Below are positions 1,103 through 64,000 of a DNA stretch of 64,000 bases, piece by piece. The stretch is from the NCBI RefSeq assembly GCF_001194135.2, contig NC_068991.1, forward strand, positions 51,286,522 to 51,350,521, in the 5' to 3' direction. The stretch comes from Octopus bimaculoides. Its lineage: Eukaryota. Position numbers and translations under genes: made by a program. The notes under the pieces are model-generated. The model ran no database searches. It was not told the DNA's origin and saw only the letters and a program-made list of their open reading frames with translations. Within the stretch, counting starts at the first letter, position 1, and every line of letters begins with the position of its first letter.

Positions 1103-1310
1103 TTTTAAATTTTTGCACCAGGCCAGCAATTTCAGGAGAGTGGGTAAGTGAATCATATCAACCCCAGAACTCAACTGATATTTAATTTATTGACCCTGAA
1201 AGGACGAGAGGCAAAGTTGGTCTCAGTGGAATTTGAACTCAGAATATGAAGATGGATGAAATGCTGCTAAGAATTTTTAGCTGCTGTGCTAATGATTCTG
1301 CCAGTTCAAC
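1103..1310 (-). mobile_element. Family-A SINE copy
   Basis: gaccctgaaaggacgagaggcaaagttgg...ggaatttgaactcagaa is the reverse complement of the family-A core. Confidence 0.75.
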
Positions 1311-7977: not shown

Positions 7978-8091
7978 GATCTCCTCTCCAAGGATGAAAT
8001 GCTTCGCTACAATAAAACTGGAAGCATCACAACATCACATATCCATCTCCATGATGCTGACAATATTCAGTTGGCATGTACTTTATTTAAG
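7978..8091 (+). CDS. Exon 1 (in window): pre-/N-terminal MyTH4, [38 protein letters not shown]
   Basis: Acceptor tttgttcctttcaccAG, donor AAG|GTAAGA; 114 nt, phase 0/0. Joins exon 2 to give [15 protein letters not shown], matching the MyTH4 A..IF..I.KYMGD helix. Confidence 0.85.
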
Positions 8092-10905: not shown

Positions 10906-10936
<31 letters not shown>

Positions 10937-26685: not shown

Positions 26686-26721
<36 letters not shown>

Positions 26722-29700: not shown

Positions 29701-29985
29701 GATAAAATAAGTACTAGTTGAGCACGAGTTGATGTAATCAATTAGTCCCCTCCACTAAATTTGCTACCCTGTTCCAAAATTTGAAACTCTTCTTCTTCTT
29801 CTTCTTCTTCTTCTTCTTCTTCTTCTTCTTCTCCTCCTCCTCCCCTTCTTCTTCTTCTTCTCCTTCTCCTCCTCCTCCTCCCCTTCTTCTTCTTCTTCTT
29901 CTCCTCCTCCTCCTCCCCTTCTTCTTCTCCTTCTCCTTCTCCTCCTCCTCCTCCTCCACCCCTTCTTCTTCTTCTTCTTCTTCTT

Positions 29986-41004: not shown

Positions 41005-41707
41005 GAGATTTTCTTCTTTCAATTTTGTTTCCATCTTCTTGATATTTAGGGCAAAGAAACTCACTTTATTCAATGATAGACCATTGAAATAATCACACCA
41101 GATTAGAGTTGTTGCTGTTCTTGTTATTATTATTATTATTATTATTATTGAGGTGGTGAGGTGGCAGAATGATTAGTGTGCCAGACAAAATGTTTAGCAG
41201 CATTTCATATGTCTTTATGTTCTGGGTTCAAATTCCACCAAGGTCAACTTTCAGGGTCAAAAAAATAATACCAGTTGAACACTGGGTTGATGTAATCAAC
41301 TTACCCCCTCCACATTACGTGTCCATACCAGCATGGCATCTATCACTCTTGTTACTTTACATTTGATTTCTCTTTTGCCTAGTTCTTCTCTCATCTCATC
41401 TATGCTTCATCGTTCATACACATTAAAATTATACATCCAGGAGAACATGCTCTCTACAATCCTCTCTAACCTTCAACATCCTCTGCATTCAGTGTCCTCA
41501 TCTCACAACTATGCAGCATCCCAGTTTGTTCACATGCATCATAAAATTTACCCTTTGCTCAGAGAGAGAGAACTCCCCACCCCGTCTACAGAGGTAATAG
41601 CTCTTTGAAGTTTACCTACTCTAATGTAACTCTAGCAGCTGTGCTTTCGGTATACTCTCCCTCACTGCTGTGAGGAGTCACAACTGTCAGAGGCAAAGTC
41701 TAGATAA

Positions 41708-43291: not shown

Positions 43292-44370
43292 ATATCATCA
43301 TCATCGTTTACCGTCCACTTTCCATGCTAGCATGGGTTGGACGATTTGACTGAGAACTGGTGGACCAGGAGGCGACACCAGGCTCCAATCTGATATATAT
43401 ATATATANNNNNNNNNNNNNNNNNNNNNNNNNNNNNNNNNNNNNNNNNNNNNNNNNNNNNNNNNNNNNNNNNNNNNNNNNNNNNNNNNNNNNNNNNNNNN
43501 NNNNNNNNNNNNNNNNNNNNNNNNNNNNNNNNNNNNNNNNNNNNNNNNNNNNNNNNNNNNNNNNNNNNNNNNNNNNNNNNNNNNNNNNNNNNNNNNNNNN
43601 NNNNNNNNNNNNNNNNNNNNNNNNNNNNNNNNNNNNNNNNNNNNNNNNNNNNNNNNNNNNNNNNNNNNNNNNNNNNNNNNNNNNNNNNNNNNNNNNNNNN
43701 NNNNNNNNNNNNNNNNNNNNNNNNNNNNNNNNNNNNNNNNNNNNNNNNNNNNNNNNNNNNNNNNNNNNNNNNNNNNNNNNNNNNNNNNNNNNNNNNNNNN
43801 NNNNNNNNNNNNNNNNNNNNNNNNNNNNNNNNNNNTATATATATATATATATGCATGTATACATTGTGTGAATGTATGTATGGATATGTATGCAACGGGA
43901 AGGGCATCCAGTCATACAAAAATCTGCCTCAACGAACTCTGTCCAACCCATGTAGGCATGAAAAAGTGGACATATGGCTACTACACTTAGATCTCCAGCA
44001 CTGGTTCATACCTATAAACATATATAAAACCACAATTAGTAGTAGATTTGTCTCCCACTTCAATCATGTCCATCAACCTTCTAGTGTCTTCCTTACTACT
44101 GCATTAATCCAGAGAAAAAACTTTCAATTAAAAACACCAAACATTAATGAATTTATTCAAGTTCTAGAGAGCAGTGAAAGGGAGATAATTTGAAAAAACC
44201 ATTTTTTTTCATAAGAATATGGAAATTTTAAAAACTGAAATCAGATTTCGGCTTTATATCTGGAAATAATTATTAATCCAACTTCTCAGTAAGATAGTAA
44301 ATAACAATATACTTACTTTTGTAAATGTTCAATTTGTTGCTTTGCTTTTGTAAAATGTATGGACTAATGG

Positions 44371-45015: not shown

Positions 45016-45621
45016 ATTTATATAAATTATAAATTAAATTATATATATTTATGGAAAAATTGATGGGTTTTTTTCCTTATGAGGTTTTTTCACGCTGTCT
45101 ACTTGATAAATTCTTATAAAGATTTTATCCTTACATTATATATATAGATAATATATAATTTGATTTTTGCTTATTTACTAATACATATTTTTGTTTAATT
45201 TTGTTTATTTGTCTCTTATTTTTCAGAGTGTACAAAGTTTAAGTCCTTTAGTTTGTAAAATACATTTTATGGATGGTAAAACTAAAGCAGTTCATGCAAT
45301 GCCCTGTGATACAACTGCCGAAATTCTGGATAAGGTCGCCCACAAAATTGGTCTTCAATCTGTTGAGGGCTGGGCTCTTTATGAGGTGAGTTGATTGAAG
45401 AGAATTATTTTGGATTTCATTTCCTGGATCTATATTCTTATTTCCTTTGTACTGGTTTCAATAGAAAAATGGTAGGGCACTGCCACCAGTAGTTTTAGAT
45501 AATTCTTTATTTCAGTTATGAACTTATTTTCTTGAATCATAAATAACTAATCACTAAGTTATTCTTTTTAACTCAACAATGGATTTACACCTCTAAACAT
45601 GACACCAGTTCTAACAGAATG

Positions 45622-46419: not shown

Positions 46420-49400
46420 TAAAACAGTTTGATCTGGCCCCATGCAACTTAAACTTTTGTTGGCTCCTCACAGGAACCTACAAAACTTTAAGATGCATGA
46501 AGCTGAATCAAACTGTTTCAATTGATACTATATGAACCTTCTACAAAATGTGTGGAGTACCTCTTTGTTTTGTTTACCCACTCATATATATTCATTTATT
46601 TATATACGAGTTAAATTTTGGCTCTCATTTCTAGCAATTGTAGGTGCTATTTTGCACCCACATTTATCAATTTTACCTTTTGGGTTTTCATTTGCTATAG
46701 ACACATATATTATAATGTATTTAATATATCAATATATTATTATATCTTATTGTATGTTACTATATATATANNNNNNNNNNCATTATTACAACTATATATA
46801 TATAGTTGTAATAATGAAGTCAAACTAAATAGTGATATGTTCCAGGTTTGTATAATATATAATAGGAAATGAATCCATTATGTAAACCTTCCTCAGTTAA
46901 AGCATTTTAAAAATGTGAAGAAATTGATGGAAATGTTTCAATCACACACACCCATGTGTGTGATTTATCATCTAAGGGGGTAACAACATATCAAATTCTG
47001 ATGACTGATCATATTCTAATGTGTTTATGAATAACTTTGCTTATCTGTTGACACAACACTGCTTTTGTACATCAATTGTTTGGACAAGTAGGTATTTGAA
47101 AATCACTTAGCTTCAAGGTGCTTATATATAATTGGCACTCTGTTGGTTCTAACAATGAGGGTTCCAGTTGATCTGATCAACAGAACAGCCTGCTCATGAA
47201 ATTAATGTGCAAGTGGCTGAGCACTCCACAGACATGCATATCACAGAATGTGACATGGCTGGCTCTTTGAAGTACAGGTACTACTCACTTTGCCAGTAGT
47301 ACCTATATATATATGATTAAATTATTTAATTGTTCAATTTATTGTTTGGGTTTCCATTTCTAATTTATATATATGACTATGTGTGTACATGTATGTATGT
47401 ATGTATCCTAATATAGGAATGTAGTGTTTATTACAATAGATATGCTTTTATTCTTTTACTCGTTTCAGTTATTTGGCTGTGGCTGGAGTACCACCTTACA
47501 AATAGTTCAGATCCTTTCCTGCCCTTGTCATATCTATCGTATTCTACTCTCACAATACATTCACAGCATTTAAAATTGAGCTTATCTCCATACAAGCAAT
47601 TTCTATGTTTTTAATATTTTTTCATCTATATTTACACTTCTTTTACCTTTGATTTTGTAATATCCCAACACATGACTAGATACTCCTTAAGACATGGTGC
47701 TCCCTAACACAGGGTACTCCTTGACACATGGCACCCTGGTCAATGACCCAAGTTTCCATTACATTCTGAAAGTACAGAAGTTGTCACTGGTTGAATGCTT
47801 TTCCTGTTACCAGCACTCTCTTGTTTCCGACTAATGTATTATTAAACAATGCAAGGTAATGAGCTGGTAGAATCATTAGCAGGCTGGGGAAAATGCTGTG
47901 GCATTTTCTCTGTCTTTATGTTCTGAGTTCAAATACCACCAAGGCAAACTTTGCCTTTCATCCTTTTGGGGTCAATAAAATGAGTATTAGGTTATGCATT
48001 GGCAGGGAGGGCAGTTGATGTAATCAATTTACCTTCCCCTTTGAAATTGCTGCCAAAATTTGAAACCATTATTAAGCAATGTACAAAAAATATCAAGACA
48101 ATAGCCAAGACATTAACACACATATATACACTTACACATACATATATACCTGTGTGTATGTATCCATTTGATTTATGTCTGTTTTTCCATGCTAGCATGG
48201 ATCAGGTGATTATTTCATTGAGACATTGTTTGATGCCTTTCCTATTGCTAACCCTTACCTGTTTTTTTCATGTATGGAATCTCTTATTTCACACCTCTTC
48301 AAAGACATGAAGCAAGTGACCAATTACTTGATAGAAGTTATACCAACAACACTATCCATATGCAACATTTGTACAGCACAAATGTAAACAAACAAAAAAA
48401 AAACACATGCCTATAACAAGTGCCTTTCAGTTTCCATCTACCAAATCCTCTCACAAGCTTTGGCTGACCTAGGGCTGTAGAAGAAGACATTTGCTCAAGG
48501 TGCCACACAGTGGGACTGAATCTGAAACCACATGATTGCCAAGCAAAGCATCTTTATTAGCACAACCATGTTTATACATATTCTTTTATTCTTTTATTTG
48601 TTTCAGTCATTTGACTGCGGCCATGCTGGAGCACTGCCTTTAGTCGAGCAAATCGACCCCAGGACTTATTCTTTGTAAGCCTCTTTTGCAGAACCGCTAA
48701 GTGACGGGGACATAAACACACCAGCATCGGTTGTCAAGCAACGCTAGGGAGACAAACACAGACACACAAACACACACACATACATACATATATATACATA
48801 TATACGAAGGGCTTCTTTCAGTTTCCGTCTACCAAATCCACTCACAAGGCTTTAGTCGGCCCAAGGCTATAGTAGAAGACACTTGCCCAAGGTGCCACGC
48901 AGTGGGACTGAACCCGGAACCATGTGGTTGGTAAGCAAGCTACTTACCACACAGCCACTCCTGCACCTATTTGAACAATGATAGGTTTCCTTCAATGTAA
49001 TTGACTTATCCCCTCCCCTGAAATTGCTGGCCTTGTAGCAAAATCTGAAATTAGTTTTATGACCCAAAGTTCACGAATCACATGAAAAATTCTGTTTTGT
49101 GAAATTGATAATATTTTACCAACATATCTCTTTTCATGTAGGATCATGTAATTAATATTTTCTGGTTGTTTGTATATTATTCTGAGTACTTTTATATGCA
49201 TGTGAGTGTGGGTGTATAAAAGTTGTTTTTTTTGTAAGTATGTATATATAAATATGTATATGTGTGTGCGTGTTTTTGTGTATGCATACATGTGTGTGTG
49301 TGTATATTTGCGCGTATGTGTGTATGCATACATGTGTGTGTGTATGTATGCATGTATGCATGTACGCAAGAGTGACAGTTATTTTTTATCCTGGTGATAA

Positions 49401-50160
49401 TGACATATCCAGATATATAGATTTGGTATTTTCATGGTTTTTGTTTTCTTTTATTTCATTTAGCTTTTTTTTTTTGTAACTCTGTTGTGTGTGTGTGTGG
49501 AGAGAGGGAGAAGGGAGGAGGAAGATGAAGATTAAATAGAGAACAGAAACAAACAAATCAAGGAGATCATAAGAAAATCTCCACATAGCATGGTCTTCTT
49601 TGATAACAATGTGTGAATTGTTTTACAAGTGTTCTTTGCTGTTTAATGATATTGTTATTCATGTCTTCTTTTTTCCTCTTCTTTCTGTTTCATTTCTCAT
49701 TCACCTCTCCACGCATGCACCCACAANNNNNNNNNNNNNNNNNNNNNNNNNNNNNNNNNNNNNNNNNNNNNNNNNNNNNNNNNNNNNNNNNNNNNNNNNN
49801 NNNNNNNNNNNNNNNNNNNNNNNNNNNNNNNNNNNNNNNNNNNNNNNNNNNNNNNNNNNNNNNNNNNNNNNNNNNNNNNNNNNNNNNNNNNNNNNNNNNN
49901 NNNNNNNNNNNNNNNNNNNNNNNNNNNNNNNNNNNNNNNNNNNNNNNNNNNNNNNNNNNNNNNNNNNNNNNNNNNNNNNNNNNNNNNNNNNNNNNNNNNN
50001 NNNNNNNNNNNNNNNNNNNNNNNNNNNNNNNNNNNNNNNNNNNNNNNNNNNNNNNNNNNNNNNNNNNNNNNNNNNNNNNNNNNNNNNNNNNNNNNNNNNN
50101 NNNNNNNNNNNNNNNNNNNNNNNNNNNNNNNNNNNNNNNNNNNNNNNNNNNNNNNNNNNN

Positions 50161-52190: not shown

Positions 52191-54957
52191 GACAGAGAGA
52201 GGGAGAGAGAGAGAGAGGAAAAATAAAACTGAAAAGTTGGTTCATAAATTATTTAGTTACATTATCATAAACATGTTTCAATGAAGATAAAAGATTAATT
52301 ATACAATCTGGGTGAGATAAGTTTCCTAGGTCTTTGCTTCTTCAGAGATTCATATGAAAAGACGTGTGATGTTAATCAGCACCATCTATGGTTAGTGATC
52401 CTGCGAATAAAAGTGGAATTGTAACATATCCTCCTTAAATATTCAACCTAAATGTAAAGGTATGGAAAAAGCTAGACATAGTAATGCTAACCATTCAAAG
52501 AATAAAGGTTAGAATGATATAATCTTTACTCATACAAACCCAAGCTTTTGGAATAGTAACATAGATCCTTTCTCAGTCACAGGTTTTCTTGCTTCCTATA
52601 ACAACAATAATAACAAAAATAGGGGAAAAAATAATACTAAGGATGCTAACATTAGAAAAAACATAATAGTACAAAAAGTATAAACAATATGAATAACAGC
52701 AGGGGTAAATAAAGGTTTACTAAGGTTTCTTAGACTTCCTGTGATTAACTCACTTATATGTAATTGTAGATTAGCCTCTTAATGTCCTCTTGAAGATAAT
52801 TACCTTATAAGTAATGCAATATACAAATGCAATGTTATTACACTAAATTCTATATAAGAAATCTGGTACTTAAAACTAATGGCAATACACGATTAACAAA
52901 TTATATAACATCTTGTTTCCAAAGTAGAAGATAATTGTGAATTTTAACATTCATCAAACATAATGTAATGTTGTTCAATGGAAATTATTATTCTCTAATT
53001 ACAGCTGATGTTAGTTGTTTTTTCTTCCTTTTTTTTACAAAGTGTATACACATATACGTACATTCATGTGTACATGTGTGGCTATAGGAACCAAGATATG
53101 TGTCTATATATACACATGCATGTGTATGTATTCATTATATGTTTGCATATACATATATGTGCATATAAGCATATATGCATGAATGTATGTTTACATATGT
53201 GTGTATATATGCATGTGTGTGTATAATTGTCTTCAGTTCTTCTGATTTACATAAAATAGATATATATTTAAATGAATCTTTCATTTTGAATTCTTTTTCC
53301 TATTCTCTCAGGTTACAGCTGAACATGAACGGTTCATACGAGGCTATGAGTATGTTGCTGATATCCTGGCCCAATGGGAACAGTGAGTTCTTGTTTTGTT
53401 TTAAACTTCCAAATTTGGTTCATATGCATGATGTTTGGAGGAAAATTCTGGTTAACTTCTTTAGGTTCAGATACTTGCAAATATTTTCCTTTCTCTAACT
53501 AAAGCAGCTATGTTTCTCTTCTAACGCAAGACACCTTTTCCAGCCATTGATACTACTTCCTATCAGTTGAGGGGTCTTGTGCTATTAGTTAGTTGGTGAT
53601 CTCACTGATGCCAGTGCCAAAAAGGCACCCAGTACACTCTGTAAAGTGGTTGTGTTAGGAAGGGTATCCAGCCATAGAAACCAGCCAAAACAAACAGCAA
53701 AGCTTGGTGCAGTCTTTGCACTTGCCTTTTCTTGTCAAACCATCCTACTTGTGCCAGCATGGAAAATGGATGTTAAATGATGATGGTGGTGGACATAATA
53801 ATCATTGAATATTGGGCTCTATTGCTGTTCTCAAACTTTCTAGTTTACCGTGTGTGTGTGTGTGTGTGGAGGCGAAATGGCCCAGTGGTTAGGGCAGCGG
53901 ATTCGCGGTCATAGGATCGGGGTTTCGATTCCCAGATCGGGTGTTGTGAGTGTTTATTGAGCGAAAACACCTAAAGCTCCACGAGGCTCCGGCAGGGGAT
54001 GGTGATGAACCCTGCTGTACTCTTCCACCACAACTTTCTCTCACTCTTACTTCCTGTTTCTGTTGTGCCTGTAATTCAAAGGGTCAGCCTTGTCACACTG
54101 TGTCACGCTGAATATCTCTGAAAACTACGTTAAGGGTACACGTGTCTGTGGAGTGCTCAGCCACTTGCACCTTAATTTCACTAGCAGGCTATTCCGTTGA
54201 TCGGATCAACTGGAACTCTCGACGTCGTAAGCGACGGGGTGCCAACAAACAACGTGTGTGTGTGTAGTGTGTTAGAATAGTGAAATATTCTTTTTTTCCT
54301 TTGCATGTTATTTATTTTTCCCTCCATATCTTCCATTTATTCTATTTCCAGGCAAAAGCATTTAACAAACACACCAAACAAAAGTGATTCGTTATCAAAG
54401 AAAGGCAACAAGATAGTCCTCGATGGTTCTGACTGCCGATTTGTGTTTCGAAAACGTGTCTATCGTCATGTGCATGATATTCCCAAAGATCCTGTAGAAT
54501 ATCATTTACTCTTCGCTGAAGCTGTTCACAAAGTGGTTGAAGTAAGTTCTGCTAAACAGTCAGGTCCAGGATTTGGATTTATAATAAATACCTTGTTTCT
54601 CATTTATATTTCTTTTGATTCATCTTAAAACAAAGAAAATATGATTATGATGAGTTACATATTTCCTATTACACAAATATCTAAAGAAATAGGTATGAAA
54701 ATGTTATTTGGGGATGTCGAATTCAGAAAATTATTGTTAGTAGATGTAAAGAAAAGTGTTAGATGCATATATTGACAGAGGGCCAACAAATTTAGCAATT
54801 AAACTGAGGATACAGTCTAGTTGATAGCTTGTTACTATTACATCTGTTAGCAACACAGTATTGTTAATAACTCATTGTGATTCTATAAAGCAAGTATTTA
54901 GTTTTAAAGCTGTTTCTTTGTTCCTTTATAACATTTGTTTTTCATTTAGTGAACGTA

Positions 54958-54999
<42 letters not shown>

Positions 55000-56772
55000 T
55001 TAGTTTCTCTTTCTTTAGTGTGATGTTATTGCCAGTGTCTTTATCCATTATAATGCTAATATTGTTATGCCTGGATAATGTAGCAAATGTAAATCTACCC
55101 CTAAAATATTGCTGCTTTGTTTGAGAGTAATATTTACACATTTCATACAAATTTCATAATTTTCCTAAAAGCATAAGTAATGTTAATGAAGTTGTTCTCA
55201 CTTGGAATCAACTCCAGATTAGCAGGCAAAAGAAAAAAAAAAGCGTGAAATTCTAATATTCATACTTCCTATAAAAAGAATTTTAACTACAGAAGTGGTG
55301 TTTTTTTTTTTATCTGGGAATCAAATGTCAGTAAAAGACTTAAGCTCACAAAAACCATCTACTTGACCAAGGTATTCATAATAATTAGTACATATTCATT
55401 GGCTACTGTATACGTTTGTGTTTTATAACATTAATGAAAGCTTGTCTTTAATACATTCCACTTCAATCACTTTGAATGATAAGCAATGGTTTGACGAGGG
55501 TTCCAGTTGATCTGATCAACCGAACTACCTGCTAGTGAAATTAACGTTTTAGTGGCTGAGCACACCACAGACACGCATATCCTTAAAGTAGTTCTCAGGG
55601 AGATTCGGCACAACATAAAATGTGAAAAGGCTGTCCCTTTGAATTACTGATATAACTCACTTTTGCCAGCTGAGTGGACTAGAATAATGTGAAATAAAGA
55701 CACAACACACCGCCGAGAATTGAACGCACATTCGTAAGCTGAATGTCCTAATCACTAAGTTATATGCTTTCACATTAAGCAATAAAATCCATTTAAAATG
55801 CGACTTCATTATCAAATTATGTTCTAATGATATTCTTATAATTCCATGACAATACTTCAGCTATAAAGTCTTATAAGGTTCAGAGATTTTATTACTAAAT
55901 AATATATCAAATGAACAGATCGAACAATTAAAAACTAAATTTAAAAACATATCTTACAGTTAGAAACGTGTATATTTCTCAAATGTGTATGCAATCTTTG
56001 TTAATGTAGACTTAATAATATATATGTTGTTTTTCAGTTGGATGAATTTTCTGTATCAGAGAAAGTCGCCCTTCAACTTGCTGGTTTACAAGCACAGGTT
56101 ATATGGGGAGATTACCATGAAAACAAAGATTTTCGGTAAACACTTTCATTTTATTTTTCTATTTGAGTTATCTCCCTTGATATGTTTTGGCTCAAAGCCA
56201 AAGACAACAATTTGTTACTGGTCCCAAGTAGTTAACTTTAAATGTATCTAACTGTACCAGTCTGTTTTGTGAATGCTTTAGTAATATAATTCCTACCTTT
56301 ACTCATATTTTTTCTTTAATAATCTCTACTTCTCTATGACACCAGTGCCTATCTAATAGAATTCTGATTAAATACAAGCCCTATGCTATTGACGAACATT
56401 ATATGATTGATATTTTTAAAATCGGTTTTCTGCATAATTGGTAAACGAATTGTATGTCTTAACTTTCTTACAAAGCAACACACGCAAACACTCACTCATA
56501 TACATTAAACATATTACAAACACAGACACACATAAGTAAAAAAATAAATAATTCTACAATTTGTAGCAATGTATATCCTTAACAAGTTGAATGTCTCTTT
56601 CCATCCCTCCTTCTCTCTCTCTCTCCCTATATATATATTGTGTTAAGCTAAGAAGTTGTGCATGGTACCAGAATTTTCCACTTGAGTCAAATGTAACAAA
56701 CTACACAAAATTGTTGTTAGAGTCTCCACATAAGTGGAGTCAAGACCAGTTAGTTTGTGCTGGCATTGAGTC

Positions 56773-56817
<45 letters not shown>

Positions 56818-59800
56818 GGAGTGACAAATAAAGAAATATAAATTAGAGGTAAGGGCTTCCAAAAGGAACTGTTCGAATTAATTAAGAATTTGATGTTTAT
56901 GCAAAATGTCGGATGAGAGTTCAAAATTTTAAAATTCATGGGTAAATAGGTAGATAAAATAAATATATACAGATTCGGGTGAATTCAGGTAAAGGATATC
57001 ATCTACAGCTGTTTCAGAGGTACAATGAATGTATAAATTTCCCTTATCCTTCGATTTAACTCACAATGAGCTCTTCTTAATATAGTCCATATATTGTGAA
57101 GTATACTTAAAAACATACTTTATAAGAAAATTTAACTTTATATATATACATATATATATATATGGCACCTGTGCCCAGCGTCACCTTTCTGGCACTTGTG
57201 CCCGTGACACCTGTGTAAGGATTTTCAAGCGACATCGTTGCCAGTGCCCCTGGACTGGCTCTTATGCGGGTGGCACATAAAATACACCATTTTGAGCGTG
57301 GCCGTTGCCAGTACCGCCTGACTGGCCTTCATGCGAGTGACACGTAAAAGCACCCACTACACTCTCGGAGTGGTTGGCGTTAGGAAGGACATCCAGCTGT
57401 AGAAACTCTGCCAAATCAGATTGGAGCCTGGTGTAGCCATCTGGTTTCACCAGTCCTCAGTCAAATCGTCCAACCCATGCTAACATGGAAAGCGGATGTT
57501 AAACGATGATGATGATGATGATATATATGTATGAGCTGTTACTTAAAGATGACAGAAGAGAAATTGTTAGAGACTGGAGTGAGTACAGAGAAAGGAGCTC
57601 TGTAATACAAACATGCCAACGAACTTATAATAGATGAAGTTATAGAGAACAACATTGCTGCATTGGTTTTTTTCAGCTACAAGCAACACTGTTTGTTAAT
57701 GAGTAAACATTTTTCAAGTCTTTTTCTTTTTACTAATAATAAACTTTTACTTTTAGTTATGGAGAAGCGAAACAGTACCTGTGTGAACGCATATTAGAGG
57801 CTGATATGAGTAAAGACTGGGGAAATTCTATTGCAGAAGCCCACGAAGTAAGCCATATTTAGTTTCTGATAATCTTCTTTTTAGACATAGGATAGTAGGT
57901 CACATCTTGTACATTTTGTACATAGTTATGACTCTACTAAATAATATCAATAACAAACCATTTTTGCATGTTTTTGACTTTGTATTTATAAATGATAAGA
58001 TAAAGAGATGACAAAGGAATAAACGATTTATCTTATGAACTTCATTAATCATTTATTCCTTTGTCATCTCTCTTTCTTATTACCGCTCTATACTTAGCCA
58101 ACATACTGTTCTGAAACATTATATATATTGAGTTCTACACCAGGGTATTAGTCTTGCAATGCCTAAGCAAAATATTTGTGGATGACATATATTTTCAAAA
58201 GACTACAAAAAATTTCAAATTGGTACAGTCTCGATGACAAATGTGTAGTATGCACTTATAAACAGTGGTTTTCGTAAAATTTGTATAAGACAAAAAAAAA
58301 AAAAATCTGAAATAAAAGCACCAAAGGTGAAGCAAATGGTTAACAATGATGAATAAATGATAAGAAAAAGAAAATTAATCAATACAATTTTATTTTTCAA
58401 TTTTCTTTTGAAATCACAACTTTATGCAGTTTTTTTCACAAAGTGAGATATCATATGATATAAGACCATGGTTACTACTCGAGTTTACATGCTTTGTCTT
58501 CTCTACACAAACAATTCAATATTTATTATCATTAACTTACAGCTGGCACCTATAAAGATAAGCTGTCGTGTGACCACAGTTCTAAATATATTGGGTTGGC
58601 AACTAAGTTCCTGCGGTTTTTTTAAATTTAAATTTTTTAAAAGGTTTAATAAAAAATAACAACTAATTAATCAATAATGTATTCACCTTTGTTGTTTACA
58701 ACTTCTTCTCAGCGTTCAACAAGATTTTCAGTACCTCGTTGGTAGAAATCACCCGATTTCGACTCGAAAATTTGATCCAACCAAGCTCTCAATTTTGCAT
58801 CAGTATTCAACAAAACTTCGCGCATAGCATTTGAAAGGGATCAAATGAGGTGGAAATCCGTTGATACCAAATCAGGAGAGTATGGCGGGTGTGGCAGCAC
58901 TTCCCAGCCATGCATTTGAATGGCTTCCTTAGTCATATTGGCGATATGAGGCGGATGTTGTTGTGCAGCAGAAGAACTCCATGCTGCCAATTAAGTCTTT
59001 TCTCTTGAATAGCCATGTTGAGTCGTTCCATCTGTTGAACATAGAGTTCCGCGTTGACTGTTTGGTTCCATTCAAGCAATTCGTAATGGATAATCCCTTC
59101 CCAGTCCCACCATATGCACAACATCATTTTATGCAGATGAAGATCTTGTTTCATGTGCGGTGTCGCTTGTTTACCGGGGCTAAGCCATTCCTTATACTGC
59201 TTCATATTGATGTACAAGCACCATTTTTCGTCACCAGTAACAATTCAGTAAAGAAATCATTGCTTGTGTCCATGAGTTGATTAGTGATGAGCAAGCAAAC
59301 CAGCAGAGATTGTGGCTCGTTGATTTTTGTTGTTGTCACTTAAAGTATGCAGAACCCATGCTCCATACTTCTGAACCTTTCCCATCGACTGAAGATGCTT
59401 CTCTGTAGCAGTGTGGGAGCATTCCACTTTCTCTGCCAGTTCCCTTGTCATTTGACGAGAATTTTTGTGCAAAAGTTAGTTTAATAACTCTTCAGCCAGA
59501 ACGAGGTGCGTCTATGAGGTCAAAATTTCTATTTTTGAACTTGGCATACCCATCACGAGCAGTTCTTTCAGCTATGGCACCCTCTCCATACACAGCACAA
59601 ATGTCGTGAGCAGCTTTTGTGGCCTTAGAACCTTGATTAAAAGCAAAAAGAAGGAGGTGTCGAAAATGCTCATTTTTCTTAACTTGACATTCCATTTTAA
59701 CGATCTGAAAATAAACAAAAATTAACTAAAATTAACTAGAAAAAGAAACGAAATAGATTCCAAAATTTGAAAACGCAATACATTCCAAAATTTATAAAAA

Positions 59801-62800
59801 TGGCAGGAACTTAGTTGCCAGCCCAATATGATACAACAATAGAACTGAAGTCTGCATTTAGATAAAATGCTATATCATTTCTCCATCATATAGAGTTTAT
59901 TGTATTATAATGGACTATATCATTAACTTTCTAGACATGATATTCACACTTAAGTTGTCTGAAGAATTAAGACTTGTAACATTTAATCCCAATACTTGTG
60001 AGGATAAGTATTTATTTGACATAAGACATTTGTATCAGACTAATAGAAACTTCTCTTATTTACTATTCTTATCTGCTTTCTTCAATCCTGATGTGGGAAA
60101 ATAAGTAACTATTTGTCAGCTTTTTATAATAACTAAACTGCTCTTGTTACACTAAATTCACGATCCATTCAAGACCTTAAATTAGCCACAAAAACTAGAA
60201 TTGTATTCTGTTAGATAGTTTACTTGTGTTCGTTGAGTTTGCTATTTTTCAGTTGTCATTTTTTTCTCCTTTTTCTAGCATTATGGTTTGGGAAAGTCAG
60301 AAATTGAAGCAAACGTCTGGTATTTGACGTGTGTAAAACAGTTTCCTCTTTATGGCTGTACATTGTTCTCAATAGTGCATAAAGGACTTTGGTCACACAC
60401 CAGTGACTCCTTACTTGCTGTCAACATGGATGGAATCAAATTTATTCGTTCTCGGGATAAATCTATTATTCATGACTTTAAGTATTCTGACATCGAGACT
60501 ATTACATTAGATCCAAATGATAACTACATCACATTGGAGCTGTTTAATGACACAGGTATAGGATGTACACAACGCTGTTTCATGTTTGAAACTCTTTACA
60601 AAGAAGATATTGGCCATCTTATTGAAAGTTATTCTCCAGCACATGCAACTTGGCTCCGGCCAGAATATGACAACTGGAAAAAGGTACGCACCATTTTTCT
60701 TCAAATTAATCTGCATATCCTCCTTATTAATAACAACTGAGACTGCTATCATGCAATTAAGAAAGCAAAATGTATTTTCATATAACATACGAATAAAAGC
60801 CTCCCACCATCTCTTCTTCACCATGTTTCCTGATTTGCTATGTGTCCTGTGTCCACTTTACTAAATACATTTCCATCAGATTTGACCAATATTTCCCCTC
60901 TTTGCTATCAGAACCTTACTCTCCACATAAACCAATACCCTTGCTATTAACTTTGTTCCTTTACTCTCAATACTTTCAATAATAATGATCAGTTCTTCCT
61001 TCTTCTTTTACATTGTCTTCAGTCATTAATTTCTGCAACCATTGTCTTAAGTAAATATTCAGGTTTGTAGCAAGGCAAGGAGTGAATTCCATTTTCAGTC
61101 TCCAGAAAATTTGCAAAGAACTTTATTGCTTTGGAAGCAATAAAACAACATTTTAAAAAATAGCTAAAGACTTAAAACTTCACTTGTAAAAATATTGGTT
61201 TCAAAGTTTGTTCATAAGGCCAGCAGTTTTGGAGGAGTGGGTAAGTTGATTACATAAATCCCAATGTTCAACTGGTACTTATAAAAATATTGACATTTGA
61301 CACTTTGGTAACTTTATCTGTTGCAAAAATCATTAAGATTTAAGTGAAAATCTTGGTATGCTGTTCTTTGTCTGGATTGCTTTCTCAAGATCCCTTTTAC
61401 ATGTCAGTGGCTACCAATGGAAGAGCATTGCCAGTGAAACCTTCCTACCAGATACTTTTACACGGGAATATAAGAAAAATGGTTTAAATCAAAGGTTTTC
61501 AACCATTTTTTACCTATGGATCCCTTTAATTCCTACCTTACTCTGGTAGACCCTCATAGCCATTTGCTGTTTAAAAAATCATATTATATTTTTATACTTG
61601 GATATCATAAGGAATTGTATTCAACAAATTGTAAAAGTATTTTGAGTATTTTAGTAGCATAATCAATTTCATGCACATAAATTTTAACAACAAAATTTTA
61701 TGTGGACCTCAGTTGAGAACTACTGGTTTAAATGGTTATCTCTTCAGTTTGTGTGTGTACCATATCTTTTTCAATTAATATCAAATACTTCTCCTCAAAA
61801 ACAAAAAAACAAGCCATTGAAAGTCAGTAGCAGAAAGTAACTCGGACTCTGAATAGATTATGGAATTATTCTGTGGCAGTCATCGTCATCATTTTAATGT
61901 CCACTTTTCCATGCCTGCATAAGTCAGACAATTTCAACAAGGAAATTATGAAGCAAAACCATAAAATATAAATCATGTCTTTAACCCACCTTATTTCCAT
62001 GTCTTCTTTGATACTATCCATCTTCCAACTAATGTGCTGTTTCACATCTTCTGAAAGAAAGGTTTTCTATCTTGCAGTAAAAATTCTTTCTATAGCAGTT
62101 ACAGCCCTGCATCCTCTCTAGCTGAATGAGACTCTGCTAATTTTATGCTTGTTTAAGTCTAATAAGTTATAGAAACAGTCCTTATAAATATGCTTTTTTG
62201 AATACCATTTGCCACTAAATTCCATAAAACAGTAATGCTTGAAGTCTGTCAAATAGTTGGTACTACATCACTTTTAACTCCTCAGATGTATTCAATTCCT
62301 ATTGTACCACTTTTTATTTATCTCTCAGCAGATACAACACAAATTGTGTGACATGATGTACTTAGAATTTTTCTTTTAAAATCATGTCGCACAAACATGT
62401 TGAGGACATCCAGACAATGATTTTTATAATCACAGCTCACCACAATGCGATCAGTTTTTGTCATCATTGAAGATTGCTGAGATTTAGGATCATTCTTATC
62501 AATTTGAAATACTGGTACAACTTGTAATATTTTGTACAGTTCTACATTTGGAGTTAAAATTCCACTGAGGTTGACTTTGCCTTTCATCCCTTCGAGATCA
62601 ATAAAATAAGTACCAGCTGAGTACTGGGGTCAATGTAATCAATTAGCCCCCTTCCCCCAAATTGCTGGCCTTGTGCTATTCTTCATAGACTTCTTCCACT
62701 TTTTTCATTCAAGACATTAGTAAATATTTTATTATTGCAACATATGTACTTATATTTTAACACTTTATTCTCATTTGCTTCCTCTAATAGATGCGTATGT

Positions 62801-62927
62801 CAGACGAAGAGAAATTAAAATTATATGAGGAGGTTGTCAGAACTCGAAGAAAACTTGTTGAAAGTAACATTCTCCAGCGACCCTCACCAGAAGGTGGAGC
62901 TAACTTTTTCCGTTCAACACTGCGCAA
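7978..62927 (+). CDS. Partial multi-exon gene: MyTH4-FERM domain protein, probably an unconventional myosin tail. Join 7978-8091, 37763-37990, 38397-38528, 45227-45385, 53312-53382, 54352-54541, 56038-56135, 57757-57847, 60279-60683, 62791-62927
   Basis: All ten exons have pyrimidine-tract AG acceptors and GT donors with compatible phases (0,0,0,0,2,0,2,0,0). The spliced frame has no stop over 1625 nt. MyTH4 motifs: [29 protein letters not shown] motifs: [48 protein letters not shown]. Myosin class cannot be fixed without a search. Confidence 0.93.
8345..8490 (+). mobile_element. Family-A SINE copy
   Basis: cattagcacgctggataaaatgcttagc...gttctgagttcaaattcc...ctttcatcctttcagggttgataaaataag. 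Confidence 0.75.
8507..8640 (-). mobile_element. Family F copy, internally deleted (both ends retained)
   Basis: gagtgagagagcagtgcatg fused directly to tggtattgagcagaatatttgctgtagccc...agccactgcctag; left flank (ATT)n. Confidence 0.7.
9130..9518 (-). mobile_element. Family F copy, truncated at one end
   Basis: Colinear with 46005-46387; (ATT)n begins at ~9526. Confidence 0.75.
13430..13772 (-). mobile_element. Family-C SINE copy
   Basis: ctcatttctacagctgagtgaactggagcaatgtgaaataaagtgtcttgctcaagaacacaac is the reverse complement of the family-C body. Confidence 0.78.
15378..15772 (-). mobile_element. Family-B SINE copy (head truncated); another head fragment at 15260-15350
   Basis: ttttacttgtttcagtcatttgactgtggccatgctggagcaccgcc...gacacttgcccaaggtgccatgcagtgggactgaaccc. 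Confidence 0.82.
16525..16850. repeat. Compound (CA)n/(TA)n/(TG)n microsatellite
   Basis: Directly visible. Confidence 0.9.
17708..18090 (-). mobile_element. Family-B SINE copy (diverged)
   Basis: cttttacttgtttcagtcattagactgtggccatactgg...ggactgaacccagaac. Confidence 0.75.
18680..19205 (-). mobile_element. Family-E copy with an expanded ~66-bp tandem unit (about 4.3 copies, 18811-19105)
   Basis: Repeated gccagt...actggcaa.gat..cgct.gaatggtg.ttt.a.gtgccac units. More decayed family-E fragments at ~3095-3290, 10655-10925, 14935-15260, 26990-27155, 43295-43392, 43890-43975, 48165-48300, 53540-53790, 61880-61930. Confidence 0.8.
19330..19625 (+). mobile_element. Probable 3' end of a Tx1/L1-clade LINE
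   Basis: Translates with frameshift to ...[13 protein letters not shown] / [31 protein letters not shown], resembling ORF2 C-termini of mollusc Tx1-like elements (recalled, not searched). Confidence 0.45.
21392..21600 (+). mobile_element. Family-A SINE copy (internally deleted)
   Basis: gaactggcagaattgttagc...ggtcaactttgcctttcatcctttcaggatcgataaaataagtaccag...caaaatttgaaacc. Confidence 0.72.
22235..22505 (-). mobile_element. Family-A SINE copy plus adjacent partial head
   Basis: atcgaccccgaaaggatgaacggcaaagtggacttcggtggaatttgaactcagaacg is the reverse complement of the core. Confidence 0.8.
23261..23352. repeat. 20-bp minisatellite (GCATACATACATATGTTCAT), about 4.6 copies
   Basis: Units start at 23261, 23281, 23301, 23321, 23341 (partial). 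Confidence 0.92.
23355..24292 (-). mobile_element. RTE-clade LINE relic with internal deletions
   Basis: [52 protein letters not shown]; [20 protein letters not shown]; [10 protein letters not shown]...[12 protein letters not shown]; [21 protein letters not shown]. These are RTE/BovB-like ORF motifs; (CATA)n on both flanks. Confidence 0.82.
27560..29260 (-). mobile_element. Decayed R4/Dong-clade non-LTR retrotransposon, copy 1 (5'-truncated RT-RLE ORF); C/A-rich putative 3' UTR may extend to ~27185
   Basis: Manual minus-strand translation across frameshifts gives, in order: [11 protein letters not shown] (YMDD 28953-28964), [20 protein letters not shown]...[45 protein letters not shown] (degenerate CCHC), [11 protein letters not shown], and C-terminal [18 protein letters not shown]. 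All are typical of R4-clade ORFs. Confidence 0.8.
29347..30198 (+). mobile_element. Three head-to-tail family-A SINE copies (29347-29565, 29578-29787, 30034-30198) separated by microsatellites
   Basis: Each has gctggca..a..attag, gttctgagtt.aaat and caactttgcctttcatcctttcag; each is preceded by (ATT)n. Confidence 0.8.
29788..30033. repeat. Compound (CTT)n/(CTC)n polypyrimidine tract ending in (ATT)n
   Basis: About 225 nt of pure C/T with a higher-order (ctt)n-(ctc)n-cccc unit. Confidence 0.95.
30199..30337. other. Assembly gap (139 N)
   Basis: N run. Confidence 1.
30590..30815 (-). mobile_element. tRNA-derived SINE 'family A', least-decayed copy
   Basis: Sense strand has A-box-like T(C)GCAGAAACGT and B-box GAGTTCAAATTCC, body gaggtcgactttgcctttcatcctttcggggtcg; CpGs retained. 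Confidence 0.85.
30860..32625 (-). mobile_element. Decayed R4/Dong-clade non-LTR retrotransposon, copy 2 (RT plus restriction-like endonuclease)
   Basis: [24 protein letters not shown](*)[50 protein letters not shown] (ORF 31556-32074). RLE region [20 protein letters not shown]...ID...P...KE.EK..KY..LK.EI at ~30900-31200. Confidence 0.85.
35396..35712 (+). mobile_element. tRNA-derived SINE 'family C'
   Basis: tgttgtattcttgagcaagacacttcatttcacattgctcctgttcactcagctgtagaaatgag; inverse copy at 13430-13772. Confidence 0.75.
37763..37990 (+). CDS. Exon 2: MyTH4 core, ELTKYIRGE...[44 protein letters not shown]
   Basis: tttcttttctttcaacAG acceptor, AAG|GTAATA donor; 228 nt, phase 0/0; canonical MyTH4 signature. 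Confidence 0.95.
38397..38528 (+). CDS. Exon 3: MyTH4 C-terminus, [44 protein letters not shown] (missed by ORF track)
   Basis: ttgctgttttttgtAG acceptor, TTA|GTAAGT donor; 132 nt, phase 0/0; MyTH4 R..PPS..E motif. Confidence 0.93.
39404..39623. mobile_element. piggyBac-type MITE (220 bp), copy 2, inverted relative to copy 1
   Basis: TTAA at 39400-39403 and 39624-39627; right end GTAATGAAAGGG is the exact reverse complement of copy 1's left TIR; same length; internal blocks align (aaaa(t/c)cttccatca; ttatttt.ctaaat). Confidence 0.75.
40090..40404. mobile_element. hAT (Charlie-like) MITE, 315 bp
   Basis: TIRs CAGGGGTTTTCAAACT / AGTTTGAAAAACCCTG; perfect 8-bp TSD ACATAATT (40082-40089, 40405-40412); repeated subterminal (c/t)GGACCCC motifs. 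Confidence 0.9.
41150..41310 (+). mobile_element. Family-A SINE copy after (ATT)n
   Basis: gtggcagaatgattag...gttctgggttcaaattccaccaaggtcaactttcaggg. Confidence 0.72.
41708..41768. repeat. (GATA)n microsatellite
   Basis: Directly visible. Confidence 0.95.
43408..43835. other. Assembly gap (428 N)
   Basis: N run flanked by (TA)n. Confidence 1.
45227..45385 (+). CDS. Exon 4: FERM F1 start, [53 protein letters not shown]
   Basis: ctcttatttttcAG acceptor, GAG|GTGAGT donor; 159 nt, phase 0/0. Confidence 0.94.
45831..46387 (-). mobile_element. ~557-bp non-coding interspersed element ('family F') embedded in (ATT)n; longest copy in the window; strand inferred
   Basis: (ATT)n on both flanks (45792-45830, 46388-46420); homologous copies at 8507-8640 and 9130-9518; no TIRs or Pol III B-box seen. 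Confidence 0.75.
46771..46780. other. Assembly gap (10 N)
   Basis: N run. Confidence 1.
47130..47295 (-). mobile_element. Family-D 3' tail fragment
   Basis: ggttccagttgatctgatcaacagaacagcctgctcatgaaattaatgtgcaagtggctgagcactccacagac is the reverse complement of the D tail. Confidence 0.7.
47852..48070 (+). mobile_element. Family-A SINE copy
   Basis: gagctggtagaatcattagc...gttctgagttcaaatacc...ctttgcctttcatcc...caaaatttgaaacc. Confidence 0.72.
48581..48964 (-). mobile_element. tRNA-derived SINE 'family B' with central (CA)/(TA) microsatellite
   Basis: Sense head gcaggagtggctgtgtggtaag (A-box) ... ggttcagtcccac (B-box), then ggcaccttgggcaagtgtc (CORE-like ACCTTGGGCAAGT). Confidence 0.85.
49727..50160. 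other. Assembly gap (434 N)
   Basis: N run abutting (TA)n. Confidence 1.
50161..50515. repeat. Compound (TA)n/(TG)n/(GA)n microsatellite next to a gap
   Basis: Directly visible. Confidence 0.9.
53312..53382 (+). CDS. Exon 5: FERM F1, [23 protein letters not shown](Q) (missed by ORF track)
   Basis: ttctttttcctattctctcAG acceptor, CA|GTGAGT donor; 71 nt, phase 0/2; FERM F1 ER....E...D.L..WE pattern. Confidence 0.9.
53868..54253 (+). mobile_element. tRNA-derived SINE ('family D'), near full length, inserted in (GT)n
   Basis: A-box TGGCCCAGTGG, B-box GTTTCGATTCC (53922-53932), CpG-rich, (CAA)-type tail, (GT)n on both sides. Confidence 0.85.
54352..54541 (+). CDS. Exon 6: FERM F1 loop to F2 start, [63 protein letters not shown]
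   Basis: ttctatttccAG acceptor, GAA|GTAAGT donor; 190 nt, phase 2/0. Confidence 0.93.
55487..55775 (-). mobile_element. SINE with family-C-like head and family-D 3' tail
   Basis: Reverse complement contains gtgtctgtggtgtgctcagccac...gttgatcagatcaactggaaccctcgtc (D tail) and cagctggcaaaagtgag / tttatttcacatt (C body). Confidence 0.7.
56038..56135 (+). CDS. Exon 7: FERM F2, [32 protein letters not shown](R) (not in ORF-track frame)
   Basis: gttgtttttcAG acceptor, CG|GTAAAC donor; 98 nt, phase 0/2; FERM LA.LQ.Q...GDY motif. Confidence 0.92.
57165..57522 (+). mobile_element. SINE-like 'family E' with (GAT)n tail, young copy 235 nt upstream of exon 8
   Basis: gagtggttggcgttaggaagg.catccagctgtagaaac...ccaacccatgct..catggaaagcgga.gttaaac(gat)n; internal ~66-bp repeat units. 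Confidence 0.85.
57757..57847 (+). CDS. Exon 8: FERM F2, (R)[30 protein letters not shown]
   Basis: aaacttttacttttAG acceptor, GAA|GTAAGC donor; 91 nt, phase 2/0; FERM Y(L/I)P...W...I...H pattern. Confidence 0.88.
58591..59826 (-). mobile_element. Full-length, inactivated mariner (Tc1/mariner, D,D34D type) DNA transposon in intron 8
   Basis: 31-bp TIRs TTGGGTTGGCAACTAAGTTCCTGCGGTTTTT / AAAAATGGCAGGAACTTAGTTGCCAGCCCAA; TA duplication at 58589-58590 and 59827-59828; 1236 bp. Confidence 0.95.
58667..59695 (-). pseudogene. Mariner transposase pseudogene
   Basis: [25 protein letters not shown] start; AWVLH (WVPHEL-like); [11 protein letters not shown] (D1); LHNN (degenerate HDNA, D2); [13 protein letters not shown] (YSPDLAP, D3); GEYIID*. 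Several in-frame stops and frameshifts. Confidence 0.93.
60279..60683 (+). CDS. Exon 9: end of FERM F2 plus F3 (PH/PTB-like) lobe, [30 protein letters not shown]...[12 protein letters not shown]...[33 protein letters not shown]
   Basis: tttttctcctttttctAG acceptor, AAG|GTACGC donor; 405 nt, phase 0/0. Confidence 0.95.
61490..61725. mobile_element. hAT (Charlie-like) MITE, 236 bp, older
   Basis: Degenerate TIRs CAAAGGTTTTCAACC / AGTTGAGAACTACTG; 8-bp TSD GTTTAAAT (61482-61489, 61726-61733). Confidence 0.78.
62530..62675 (+). mobile_element. Family-A SINE copy, ~115 nt upstream of exon 10
   Basis: gagttaaaattccactgaggttgactttgcctttcatcccttcgagatcaataaaataagtaccag...ggccttgtgc. Confidence 0.75.
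62791..62927 (+). CDS. Exon 10: post-FERM segment, [45 protein letters not shown](K/N)
   Basis: catttgcttcctctaatAG acceptor; open 45-codon frame in phase 0; perfect AA|GTAAGT donor (read-through gives AAG TAA). Below the ORF-track length cut-off. Confidence 0.8.
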
Positions 62928-63766
62928 GTAAGTGGTACACAAATATTTCGTTTCCATTAACATAGCAAACTTATCTCAGAAACAATAACAGTTGTATAAC
63001 CTAAACAGAGTTTGGTTCTGGAATATGTTAAGATTGATCTAAAACTGCTGCAACTAACAAATAAAATTGAACAGTTCAGACCTGCTCAAAGATATTTTAT
63101 AGAAGTCTTGTTAAAAGACAATGCCAAGTCTTTCAATGATTTTCATCTTTTGGCCCAAATATATATTTTTTTCTTTTAAAGACGTTGGAGTGTTTTTCTT
63201 ACAGCTGAAATAGGAGTGATAACAGTTTTTGATATGATAGACATGAAAGAGAAGTCCAGCATTTGAACTTTCTCAGCCATAACTATTGAATCAATGAAAT
63301 ATCTACTAAGATGAAATTATAGCTTGGTAACTTACACCAAACTCAATCTCTCTCATCAAATATTCTGGCTTGGCCATGTTGACTTTATAAGATGAATGTA
63401 TTTGGCTGATATTACCAAAAATTCTTATATCTCCAAAGTCAAATGATGGAAATTATTTTGCTGATTCTTTTATTTTTTTATTTGTTAAGCATGTTAAGCA
63501 TTGTTAATTTAGAATCAAAGTCTGTTTCACCCTTATATTAATAATCAGTAAATTAATTTCAAAAATTGCCTTGTTTATGACTGTTTAAAGAAAACATAAT
63601 ATCAATATAGTGTTTTTGTGAAATACAAGTAAATATGAGGATTATTTTATCTCCAAAAATGTTAAATGTCATATTTTTCTTTTGTCTACCTGTTATATAT
63701 GTATATATCACATACATACACATATACATGTGTGTGTGTGTGTGTGTGTATGTGTGCATATATGAA

Positions 63767-64000
63767 TCATCATCATCATCATCATCGTTTAACGTCCGCT
63801 TTCCATGCTAGCATGGGTTGGACGATTTGACTGAGGACTGGTGAAACCGGATGGCAACACCAGGCTCCAGTCTAATTTGGCAGAGTTTCTACAGCTGGAT
63901 GCCCTTCCTAACGCCAACCACTCAGAGAGTGTAGTGGGTGCTTTTACGTGTCACCCGCACGAAAACGGCCACGCTCGAAATGGTGTCTTTTATGTGCCAC
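63767..64000 (-). mobile_element. Family-E copy, young, runs off the window end
   Basis: (cat)n cgtttaacgtccgctttccatgctagcatgggttggacg...; 8 mismatches in 186 nt against 57337-57522. Confidence 0.88.

What the first reader, a model, noticed from the sequence alone, without database searches (positions are those of the whole stretch)
57270..64000. Near-identical inverted SINE pair brackets exons 8-10, which would back-splice into a 633-nt stop-free in-frame circle
Seen: family-E copies at 57165-57522 (+) and 63767-64000 (-) are reverse complements, with 8 mismatches over 186 nt by manual count plus a further 37-nt arm with 2 mismatches. They sit 235 nt before exon 8 and 840 nt after exon 10. 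Exons 8+9+10 = 91+405+137 = 633 nt = 211 codons. Exon 10 ends in phase 2 (AA|) and exon 8 starts in phase 2 (|T), so the back-splice junction reads CGC-AAT-TAT (R-N-Y) with no stop anywhere; AUGs lie in frame (e.g. MRMSDEEK). Established: reverse-complementary intronic repeats promote back-splicing, and long dsRNA is an ADAR substrate; coleoid cephalopods edit RNA heavily. Inference: a SINE-driven circRNA with an endless ORF encoding tandem FERM F2-F3 plus tail units, possibly gated by A-to-I editing of the stem.
Basis: partly seen in the sequence, partly recalled or inferred. Interest (0 to 1): 0.7.

Follow-up and report, generated by a model that had tools for sequence, protein, structure and literature searches.

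The report
Inverted SINE pair flanking myosin exons
Two young copies of a common mobile element sit in opposite orientation in the introns on either side of three exons of a myosin gene; they could pair in the pre-mRNA, but nothing shows that a circular RNA is made, and the "endless reading frame" follows automatically from the gene's intron phases.

Summary
A SINE-like repeat at 57165-57522 (+) and a copy at 63769-64000 (-, cut by the window end) are reverse complements: 195 nt with 10 mismatches, plus 37 nt with 2, separated by a 21-nt indel. They could form about 224 bp of dsRNA and are the strongest inverted pair in the 64-kb window. They lie 234 nt before exon 8 and 841 nt after exon 10. 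Exons 8-10 total 633 nt and read stop-free around the circle (junction R-N-Y).

- **Frame:** 31 of the 55 possible runs of adjacent exons in this window are multiples of three, and all 31 are stop-free circles.
- **Other pairs:** ten of the twelve inverted pairs of this one repeat family bracket exons.
- **Published base rate:** in Octopus vulgaris, SINEs are 11.6% of the genome, yet total RNA-seq of 18 tissues gave only 296 confident circRNAs. The authors attributed this to ADAR antagonism.

The gene is an unconventional myosin with two MyTH4-FERM units. Exon 10 is not terminal.

The most likely reading is two neutral intronic insertions. They may form an edited intronic duplex and allow, at most, rare back-splicing. 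No RNA data could be searched.

The parts
57165..57522 (+). SINE-like interspersed repeat ('family E'), apparently full insertion, in intron 7. It has a (GAT)n tail, an internal ~67-nt duplicated unit, and a possible 9-bp target duplication ATATATATG.
   Evidence: blastn family hits; alignment of 6 copies; flanks
57270..57522 (+). Upstream arm of the inverted pair (37 nt + 21-nt bulge + 195 nt). It ends 234 nt before exon 8.
63769..64000 (-). Second family-E copy in intron 10, in the opposite orientation. It starts 841 nt after exon 10 and is truncated by the window end.
56038..56135 (+). Exon 7 (FERM F2), ends in phase 2 (CG|)
   Evidence: tblastn to P0001/P0026/P0027; splice sites
57757..57847 (+). 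Exon 8, 91 nt, end of FERM F2 lobe; starts in phase 2
60279..60683 (+). Exon 9, 405 nt, FERM F3 (PH/PTB-like) lobe; 62-78% identical to fragments from many animals
62791..62927 (+). Exon 10, 137 nt, conserved linker after the first FERM. Donor CAA|gtaagt. Not terminal.
   Evidence: 61% identity to Patella P0026 residues 972-1017, which continue 'LTKSKM...'
43294..43394 (-). Competing family-E copy in intron 3, 90% complementary to 57415-57516 and cut by assembly gap 43408-43835. Pairing here would bracket exons 4-7.
53608..53791 (+). Older family-E copy in intron 5, 72% complementary to the 63769 copy. Pairing here would bracket exons 6-10 (921 nt, also in frame).
58588..59829 (-). Decayed mariner-type DNA transposon inside intron 8 (42-nt terminal inverted repeats, broken transposase)
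   Evidence: I4; Pfam HTH_48 1.8e-17 and Transposase_1 8.6e-23 in different frames

Best explanation
Two copies of a young, abundant SINE-like retroposon inserted independently, in opposite orientations, into intron 7 and intron 10 of a gene for an unconventional myosin with two MyTH4-FERM units. The window covers the first MyTH4-FERM.

Shown: the repeats, their orientation, the exon structure, the frame arithmetic, and the predicted ability of the two arms to form about 224 bp of nearly perfect duplex in the pre-mRNA.

Inferred: the pair is selectively neutral. Its most likely molecular consequence is an intronic dsRNA that ADAR edits and that is discarded with the introns. Back-splicing of exons 8-10 is possible but, if it happens, probably rare. 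The stop-free circular frame is a by-product of introns 7 and 10 both being phase 2 in a gene made of coding exons. It is not a designed feature.
For: The repeat is real and the flanks are non-homologous. Similarity stops at the (GAT)n tail.

The 12 differences are ordinary decay: 9 are transitions, and 4 are at CpG sites.

The family is dispersed through the window in both orientations: 7 copies of 62 nt or more, plus a 19-nt tail match. Ten of the 12 inverted pairs bracket exons.

31 of 55 contiguous exon sets are multiples of 3, and all 31 are stop-free when circularised.

The gene and exon borders are confirmed by mollusc orthologues.

Literature: SINEs are 11.6% of the O. vulgaris genome, with a burst at JC distance 0.065 (PMC13282606). 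Total RNA-seq of 18 octopus tissues gave 296 confident circRNAs, 'overall low levels', which the authors attributed to ADAR. Most editing is in introns and 3'UTR hairpins (PMC9699675).
Against: The pair is the strongest inverted match in 64 kb. The predicted duplex is -430 to -440 kcal/mol, about -298 net of self-folding, against about -109 and -106 for the two nearest competitors.

The arms lie within 234 and 841 nt of strong splice sites, and there is no within-intron partner in the visible sequence. This is the geometry that favours circularisation in mammalian minigenes (my own knowledge: Zhang et al. 2014; Liang and Wilusz 2014). A low-level circle therefore cannot be excluded.

That the organism is an octopod rests on my recollection of the repeat's sequence and on the mollusc orthologues. 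It was not tested.
Confidence: 0.8

Rival explanations
1. One reading: the duplex brings the exon 10 donor next to the exon 8 acceptor, so a 633-nt circRNA of exons 8-10 is made at detectable levels. With no stop codon, it is translated round and round into concatenated FERM-F3/linker units, and ADAR editing of the stem tunes the output.
For: A strong, close complementary pair with no same-family copy between the arms. Canonical AG and GT at the two sites. Exon 10 is internal. The frame is open with in-frame AUGs. Rolling-circle ORFs are translated from some human circRNAs (PMC9242994).
Against: No RNA evidence of any kind. The base rate is very low in octopus (296 circRNAs in 18 tissues). ADAR is reported to oppose, not gate, back-splicing. 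The frame property is the majority outcome here (31/55). Rolling-circle products tend to be degraded. The rest of intron 10 is unseen and may hold a nearer competitor. A 90% copy at 43294 lies next to an assembly gap.
Confidence: 0.1
2. The looped-out structure mainly affects linear splicing. It would promote skipping of exons 8-10, which also keeps the frame because introns 7 and 10 are both phase 2. The result would be a myosin isoform lacking the end of F2, the F3 lobe and the linker of the first FERM.
For: Intron phases. Exon skipping and circularisation are mechanistically linked (established knowledge; not tested here).
Against: No transcript evidence. Exon 9 is the most conserved piece of the region, so an isoform without it would lack the F3 lobe of the first FERM.
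Confidence: 0.05
3. The pair is not two insertions but a local inverted duplication or an assembly artefact at a scaffold with gaps.
For: The window contains five N gaps, and the second copy touches the window end.
Against: Homology is confined to the repeat and stops at its (GAT)n tail. The flanks are unrelated. The copies differ by 12 substitutions and a 21-nt indel, which fits separate copies. The same family occurs elsewhere in the window.
Confidence: 0.02

Closest known systems
Inverted Alu/B1 pairs (reverse-complementary matches) flanking circularised exons in mammals
   Same: Oppositely oriented SINE copies in the two flanking introns, close to the back-splice acceptor and donor. They are long enough to form an ADAR-substrate duplex (review PMC11724312).
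   Different: No back-splice product is documented here. The repeat is an unrelated, apparently cephalopod-type element with a (GAT)n tail and no recognisable tRNA or 7SL head. The host lineage is reported to have few circRNAs.
Rolling-circle (infinite) ORF circRNAs, e.g. human circPSAP, circPFAS, circABHD12, circTau 12->10
   Same: Circle length is a multiple of three, with no stop in the host frame and in-frame AUGs.
   Different: Those have junction peptides or reporter evidence. This one is a prediction only. The property is common: 14% of human circRNAs and 56% of possible circles in this gene.
Tandem MyTH4-FERM unconventional myosins (class VII/XV/XXII-like); nearest named relatives are Patella vulgata XP_055956825 and Crassostrea virginica XP_078315383
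   Same: MyTH4, RA-like F1, FERM_M and a PH-like F3 in the window's exons. 47-75% identity exon by exon, with the same exon borders.
   Different: Only the first MyTH4-FERM lies in the window. The motor domain and second MyTH4-FERM were not seen. The myosin class was not assigned. PDB matches to myosin VII FERM domains are weak (E about 1e-3).

Membership tests
Repeat-flanked (RCM-driven) circRNA locus | Reverse-complementary sequences in the introns flanking the circularised exons | tested here: met
   232 nt at 95% with one 21-nt bulge; 224 predicted intermolecular bp
Repeat-flanked (RCM-driven) circRNA locus | Usable upstream acceptor and downstream donor (internal exons) | tested here: met
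   ttttag|T at 57757 and CAA|gtaagt at 62927. Orthologues continue beyond exon 10.
Repeat-flanked (RCM-driven) circRNA locus | Cross-intron pairing not outcompeted by within-intron or nearer pairs | tested here: inconclusive
   None in the visible sequence. However, intron 10 beyond 64000 is unseen, and the 43294 copy abuts a 428-nt gap.
Repeat-flanked (RCM-driven) circRNA locus | Back-splice junction reads; RNase R resistance | not testable with these tools
   No RNA-seq access. No same-species sequences in the protein collections. The list of 296 octopus circRNAs is not in the held supplements.
Rolling-circle ORF circRNA | Length divisible by 3, no stop in any lap, in-frame start codon | tested here: met
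   633 nt, 0 stops, several in-frame AUGs. The same is true of 31 of 55 exon sets.
Rolling-circle ORF circRNA | Cap-independent initiation and junction-spanning peptide | not testable with these tools
   Needs ribosome profiling or mass spectrometry
SINE | Short, non-coding, many dispersed copies with a simple-repeat 3' tail | tested here: met
   About 358 bp. Seven copies of 62 nt or more in 64 kb, on both strands, at 67-100% identity. Five of the six aligned copies carry a clear (GAT)n tail; the sixth shows a degraded one.
SINE | Pol III-type head (tRNA, 7SL or 5S derived) | tested here: not met
   ARAGORN finds no tRNA-like sequence in the window. No Rfam family reaches its threshold in 56500-64000. 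A/B boxes were not searched specifically, so I call the element 'SINE-like'.
SINE | Target-site duplication | tested here: inconclusive
   ATATATATG lies on both sides of the + copy, but inside a TA microsatellite. The far end of the - copy is outside the window.
MyTH4-FERM myosin | MyTH4 followed by a three-lobed FERM | tested here: met
   Pfam on the spliced 541-aa product: MyTH4 6e-27, RA_2 2.6e-27, FERM_M 1.6e-16, and weak FERM C-lobe families
MyTH4-FERM myosin | Myosin motor domain in the same protein | not tested
   No motor-domain exon was looked for in the window. The motor is present in the full-length relatives P0027, P0032 and P0034. P0026 starts at the IQ region.

The most novel reading that the evidence does not exclude
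The pair really does drive a cephalopod circRNA of exons 8-10. That circle would be translated by rolling-circle reading into concatenated FERM-F3/linker units of a MyTH4-FERM myosin, with output set by ADAR editing of the 224-bp SINE stem. This would be a species-young, transposon-created protein isoform in a lineage where circRNAs are otherwise scarce.
Probability: 0.02. Interest if true: 0.55.

Novelty: new member of a known kind. Interest (0 to 1): 0.15.

Why it matters
If a circle were made, it would be one more example of transposon-created, lineage-specific back-splicing. It would come from an animal group where heavy ADAR activity is thought to suppress circRNAs, and could serve as a test case for that antagonism. 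As it stands, the locus is an ordinary product of a SINE-rich genome with long introns. The most useful result here is negative: stop-free circular frames and exon-bracketing inverted repeats are the expected background in such genes. On their own they should not be flagged as evidence for a coding circRNA.

Tried and rejected
1. **Same-species transcripts or proteins.** I looked for any that could reveal a back-splice or linear junction. The best hits were 75-77% identical fragments from other animals, and the full HMMER scan gave mollusc orthologues only. I therefore did not spend a second large search on the junction peptide. Without the species in the collection it could not be informative.
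2. **The published octopus circRNA list.** The held supplements of PMC9699675 give only the count of 296, not the loci.
3. **Rfam and ARAGORN on the repeat and region.** Nothing reached threshold, so the repeat's RNA ancestry is unresolved.
4. **PLEKHH/MAX-1 as the gene's identity.** This was my first guess from MyTH4 + FERM. I rejected it because full-length relatives carry a myosin head and two MyTH4-FERM units.
5. **Exon 10 as the terminal exon.** I rejected it because orthologues continue for about 520 residues and the donor position is conserved.
6. **Inverted segmental duplication.** Rejected because homology ends at the repeat borders.
7. **The intron-8 hairpin as a published octopus miRNA.** The arm was not found in the held, truncated supplement tables.
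Full report
**Observation**

The stretch 57000-64000 was read directly and scanned for inverted repeats.
- The two arms are 57328-57522 / 63769-63963 (195 nt, 95% complementary) and 57270-57306 / 63964-64000 (37 nt, 95%).
- An exact comparison gives 10 and 2 mismatches. A 21-nt segment (GCCAGTACCGCCTGACTGGCC, 57307-57327) is present only in the + copy.
- The second copy runs into the window end, so its 5' part is unseen.
- A self-comparison of the whole window against its reverse complement ranks this pair first (323 bits; the next is an unrelated 324-nt pair at 80%, 278 bits).
- ViennaRNA predicts 224 intermolecular base pairs. The cofold energy is -439.5 kcal/mol, about -298 after subtracting each arm's self-folding.
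- The arm ends 234 nt before exon 8, and the other arm begins 841 nt after exon 10.

**The repeat**

The + copy (57165-57522) was used as a blastn query against the window. Hits, with their introns assigned from the exon map:

| Position | Strand | Identity | Location |
|---|---|---|---|
| 10741-10915 | + | 73% | intron 1 |
| 18685-19042 | - | 68-72% | intron 1 |
| 26704-26722 | - | 100% (19 nt) | intron 1; tail repeat only |
| 27094-27155 | + | 76% | intron 1 |
| 43294-43394 | - | 90% | intron 3; abuts N gap 43408-43835 |
| 53608-53791 | + | 72% | intron 5 |
| 57165-57522 | + | query | intron 7 |
| 63769-64000 | - | 87% with the gap, 95% gap-free | intron 10 |

- The six aligned copies share a conserved 3' half. 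Five end in a clear (GAT)n tail, and the 53608 copy shows a degraded one.
- Similarity between the two focal copies stops at that tail, and the flanks are unrelated microsatellite-rich DNA. These are separate insertions, not a duplicated segment.
- Nine of the 12 differences are transitions, and four sit at CpG sites. This is what ordinary decay produces.
- ARAGORN finds no tRNA-like sequence in the window, and no Rfam family reaches its gathering score in 56500-64000. I therefore call the element SINE-like: it is short, non-coding, dispersed and tailed, but its Pol III head was not demonstrated.

**The gene**

- Exons 8-10 translate to a FERM_M/F3 segment. Exon 9 is 62-78% identical to fragments from many animals.
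- A full HMMER scan of 1.84 billion representatives found long relatives whose Pfam architecture includes two sets of MyTH4, RA-like F1, FERM_M and PH-like F3. Three of the four checked (P0027, P0032, P0034) also carry a myosin head, and all four have IQ motifs.
- The two best relatives are Patella vulgata XP_055956825 and Crassostrea virginica XP_078315383.
- tblastn of these against the window places ten exons: 7978-8091, 37763-37990, 38397-38528, 45227-45385, 53312-53382, 54352-54541, 56038-56135, 57757-57847, 60279-60683 and 62791-62927.
- The spliced product scores MyTH4 6e-27, RA_2 2.6e-27 and FERM_M 1.6e-16.
- The window thus holds the first MyTH4-FERM of an unconventional myosin. Exons 8-10 encode the end of F2, the F3 lobe and the conserved linker that follows.
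- Exon 10 is 61% identical to Patella residues 972-1017. That protein continues 'LTKSKM...' for a further ~520 residues, including the second MyTH4-FERM. Exon 10 is therefore internal and its donor (CAA|gtaagt) is needed for the linear mRNA.

**The 'endless ORF'**

- 91 + 405 + 137 = 633 nt. Read in the gene's frame, the circle has no stop and the junction codon is AAT.
- The intron phases along the ten exons are 0,0,0,0,0,2,0,2,0,0,2.
- Of the 55 possible runs of adjacent exons, 31 (56%) are multiples of three, and every one of the 31 is stop-free when circularised.
- Any circle made of coding exons whose flanking introns share a phase has this property.
- In humans, 14% of full-length circRNAs can be translated in the host-gene frame in rolling-circle fashion. 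Their products tend to be degraded (PMC9242994).
- The frame property therefore carries almost no information.

**The arrangement**

- Using family E alone, there are four + and three - copies of 62 nt or more. Ten of the twelve inverted pairs lie in different introns and bracket exons: 2-3 and 2-10 (each bracketed by two pairs), 2-5, 4-5, 6-10, 2-7, 4-7 and 8-10.
- A second repeat family with at least eleven copies adds many more pairs.
- The 8-10 pair stands out only by strength and proximity. Its net duplex energy is about -298 kcal/mol. The 43294 x 57415 pair gives about -109 and the 53608 x 63769 pair about -106. The older full-length pair 18685 x 57165 gives -233 but spans 38 kb.
- If repeat pairing makes any circle from this part of the gene, exons 8-10 is the best candidate.
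- Two unknowns remain. The rest of intron 10 lies outside the window, and the 90% copy at 43294 is cut by a 428-nt assembly gap.

**Prior from the literature**

- Orthologues place the window in a mollusc. Its repeat and microsatellite-rich long introns match what I recall of octopus genomes, but that identification was not tested.
- In O. vulgaris, SINEs are 11.6% of the genome, with a burst at Jukes-Cantor distance 0.065 (PMC13282606). I therefore expect exon-bracketing inverted pairs to be very numerous.
- Total RNA-seq of 18 tissues gave only 296 high-confidence circRNAs, 200 of them in a single tissue. The authors describe circRNAs as expressed at overall low levels, in line with ADAR melting intronic duplexes. 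They note that most editing lies in introns and 3'UTR hairpins (PMC9699675 main text and supplement).
- This makes intronic editing the likeliest fate of the duplex. It also makes ADAR an antagonist rather than a 'gate' for the circle.
- I put the chance of a detectable exon 8-10 circle at about 10%. The chance of a translated, functional one is about 2%.

**What could not be done**

- No RNA-seq could be searched.
- The protein collections, which include assembled sequencing runs, contained nothing from this species for this gene. A junction-peptide search would have been uninformative and was not run.
- The list of published octopus circRNAs is not among the held supplements.

**Verdict**

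The feature is real and accurately described. It is an ordinary consequence of a SINE-rich genome with long introns. The circRNA, its translation and its editing control remain an untested prediction with a low prior.

Noticed in passing
window 58003-58075 (wider 57974-58101), intron 8: Strong hairpin with two perfect 20-nt arms, AGAGATGACAAAGGAATAAA, and further imperfect pairing beyond them. The MFE structure has an 18-nt terminal loop. RNA MFE is -44.5 kcal/mol and z = -7.9 against shuffles. It is unique in the window. Rfam gives only sub-threshold miRNA-like hits. The arm was not found in the held (truncated) miRNA supplement tables of PMC9699675. It could be a pre-miRNA-like element or a palindromic MITE.
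   Followed up: partly
window 58588-59829, minus strand, intron 8: Decayed mariner-type transposon: 42-nt terminal inverted repeats (90%), with the Mos1-type HTH_48 and Transposase_1 domains in different reading frames.
   Followed up: yes
window 1095-1330, 8346-8489, 21383-21600, 22309-22511, 29349-29789, 30043-30179, 30646-30817, 41135-41310, 47838-47990, 61192-61282, 62543-62676: A second, more numerous interspersed repeat family occurs on both strands throughout the gene's introns. One inverted pair lies wholly inside intron 9 (61213-61282 / 62606-62675, 77%) and ends about 115 nt before exon 10.
   Followed up: no
window 43408-43835 and four other N runs (6536-6578, 30199-30337, 46771-46780, 49727-50160): Assembly gaps. 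The one at 43408 truncates a 90%-identical family-E copy that could compete for pairing with the intron-7 copy.
   Followed up: no
window introns 7 and 10 (phases), exons 8-10: Both flanking introns are phase 2, so skipping exons 8-10 in the linear mRNA would also keep the frame. It would remove 211 residues: the end of F2, the F3 lobe and the linker.
   Followed up: no
window 13412-13734 and 35411-35731, intron 1: The second-strongest inverted pair in the window (about 324 nt, 80%), from a different repeat. Both copies lie inside the 29.7-kb intron 1.
   Followed up: no
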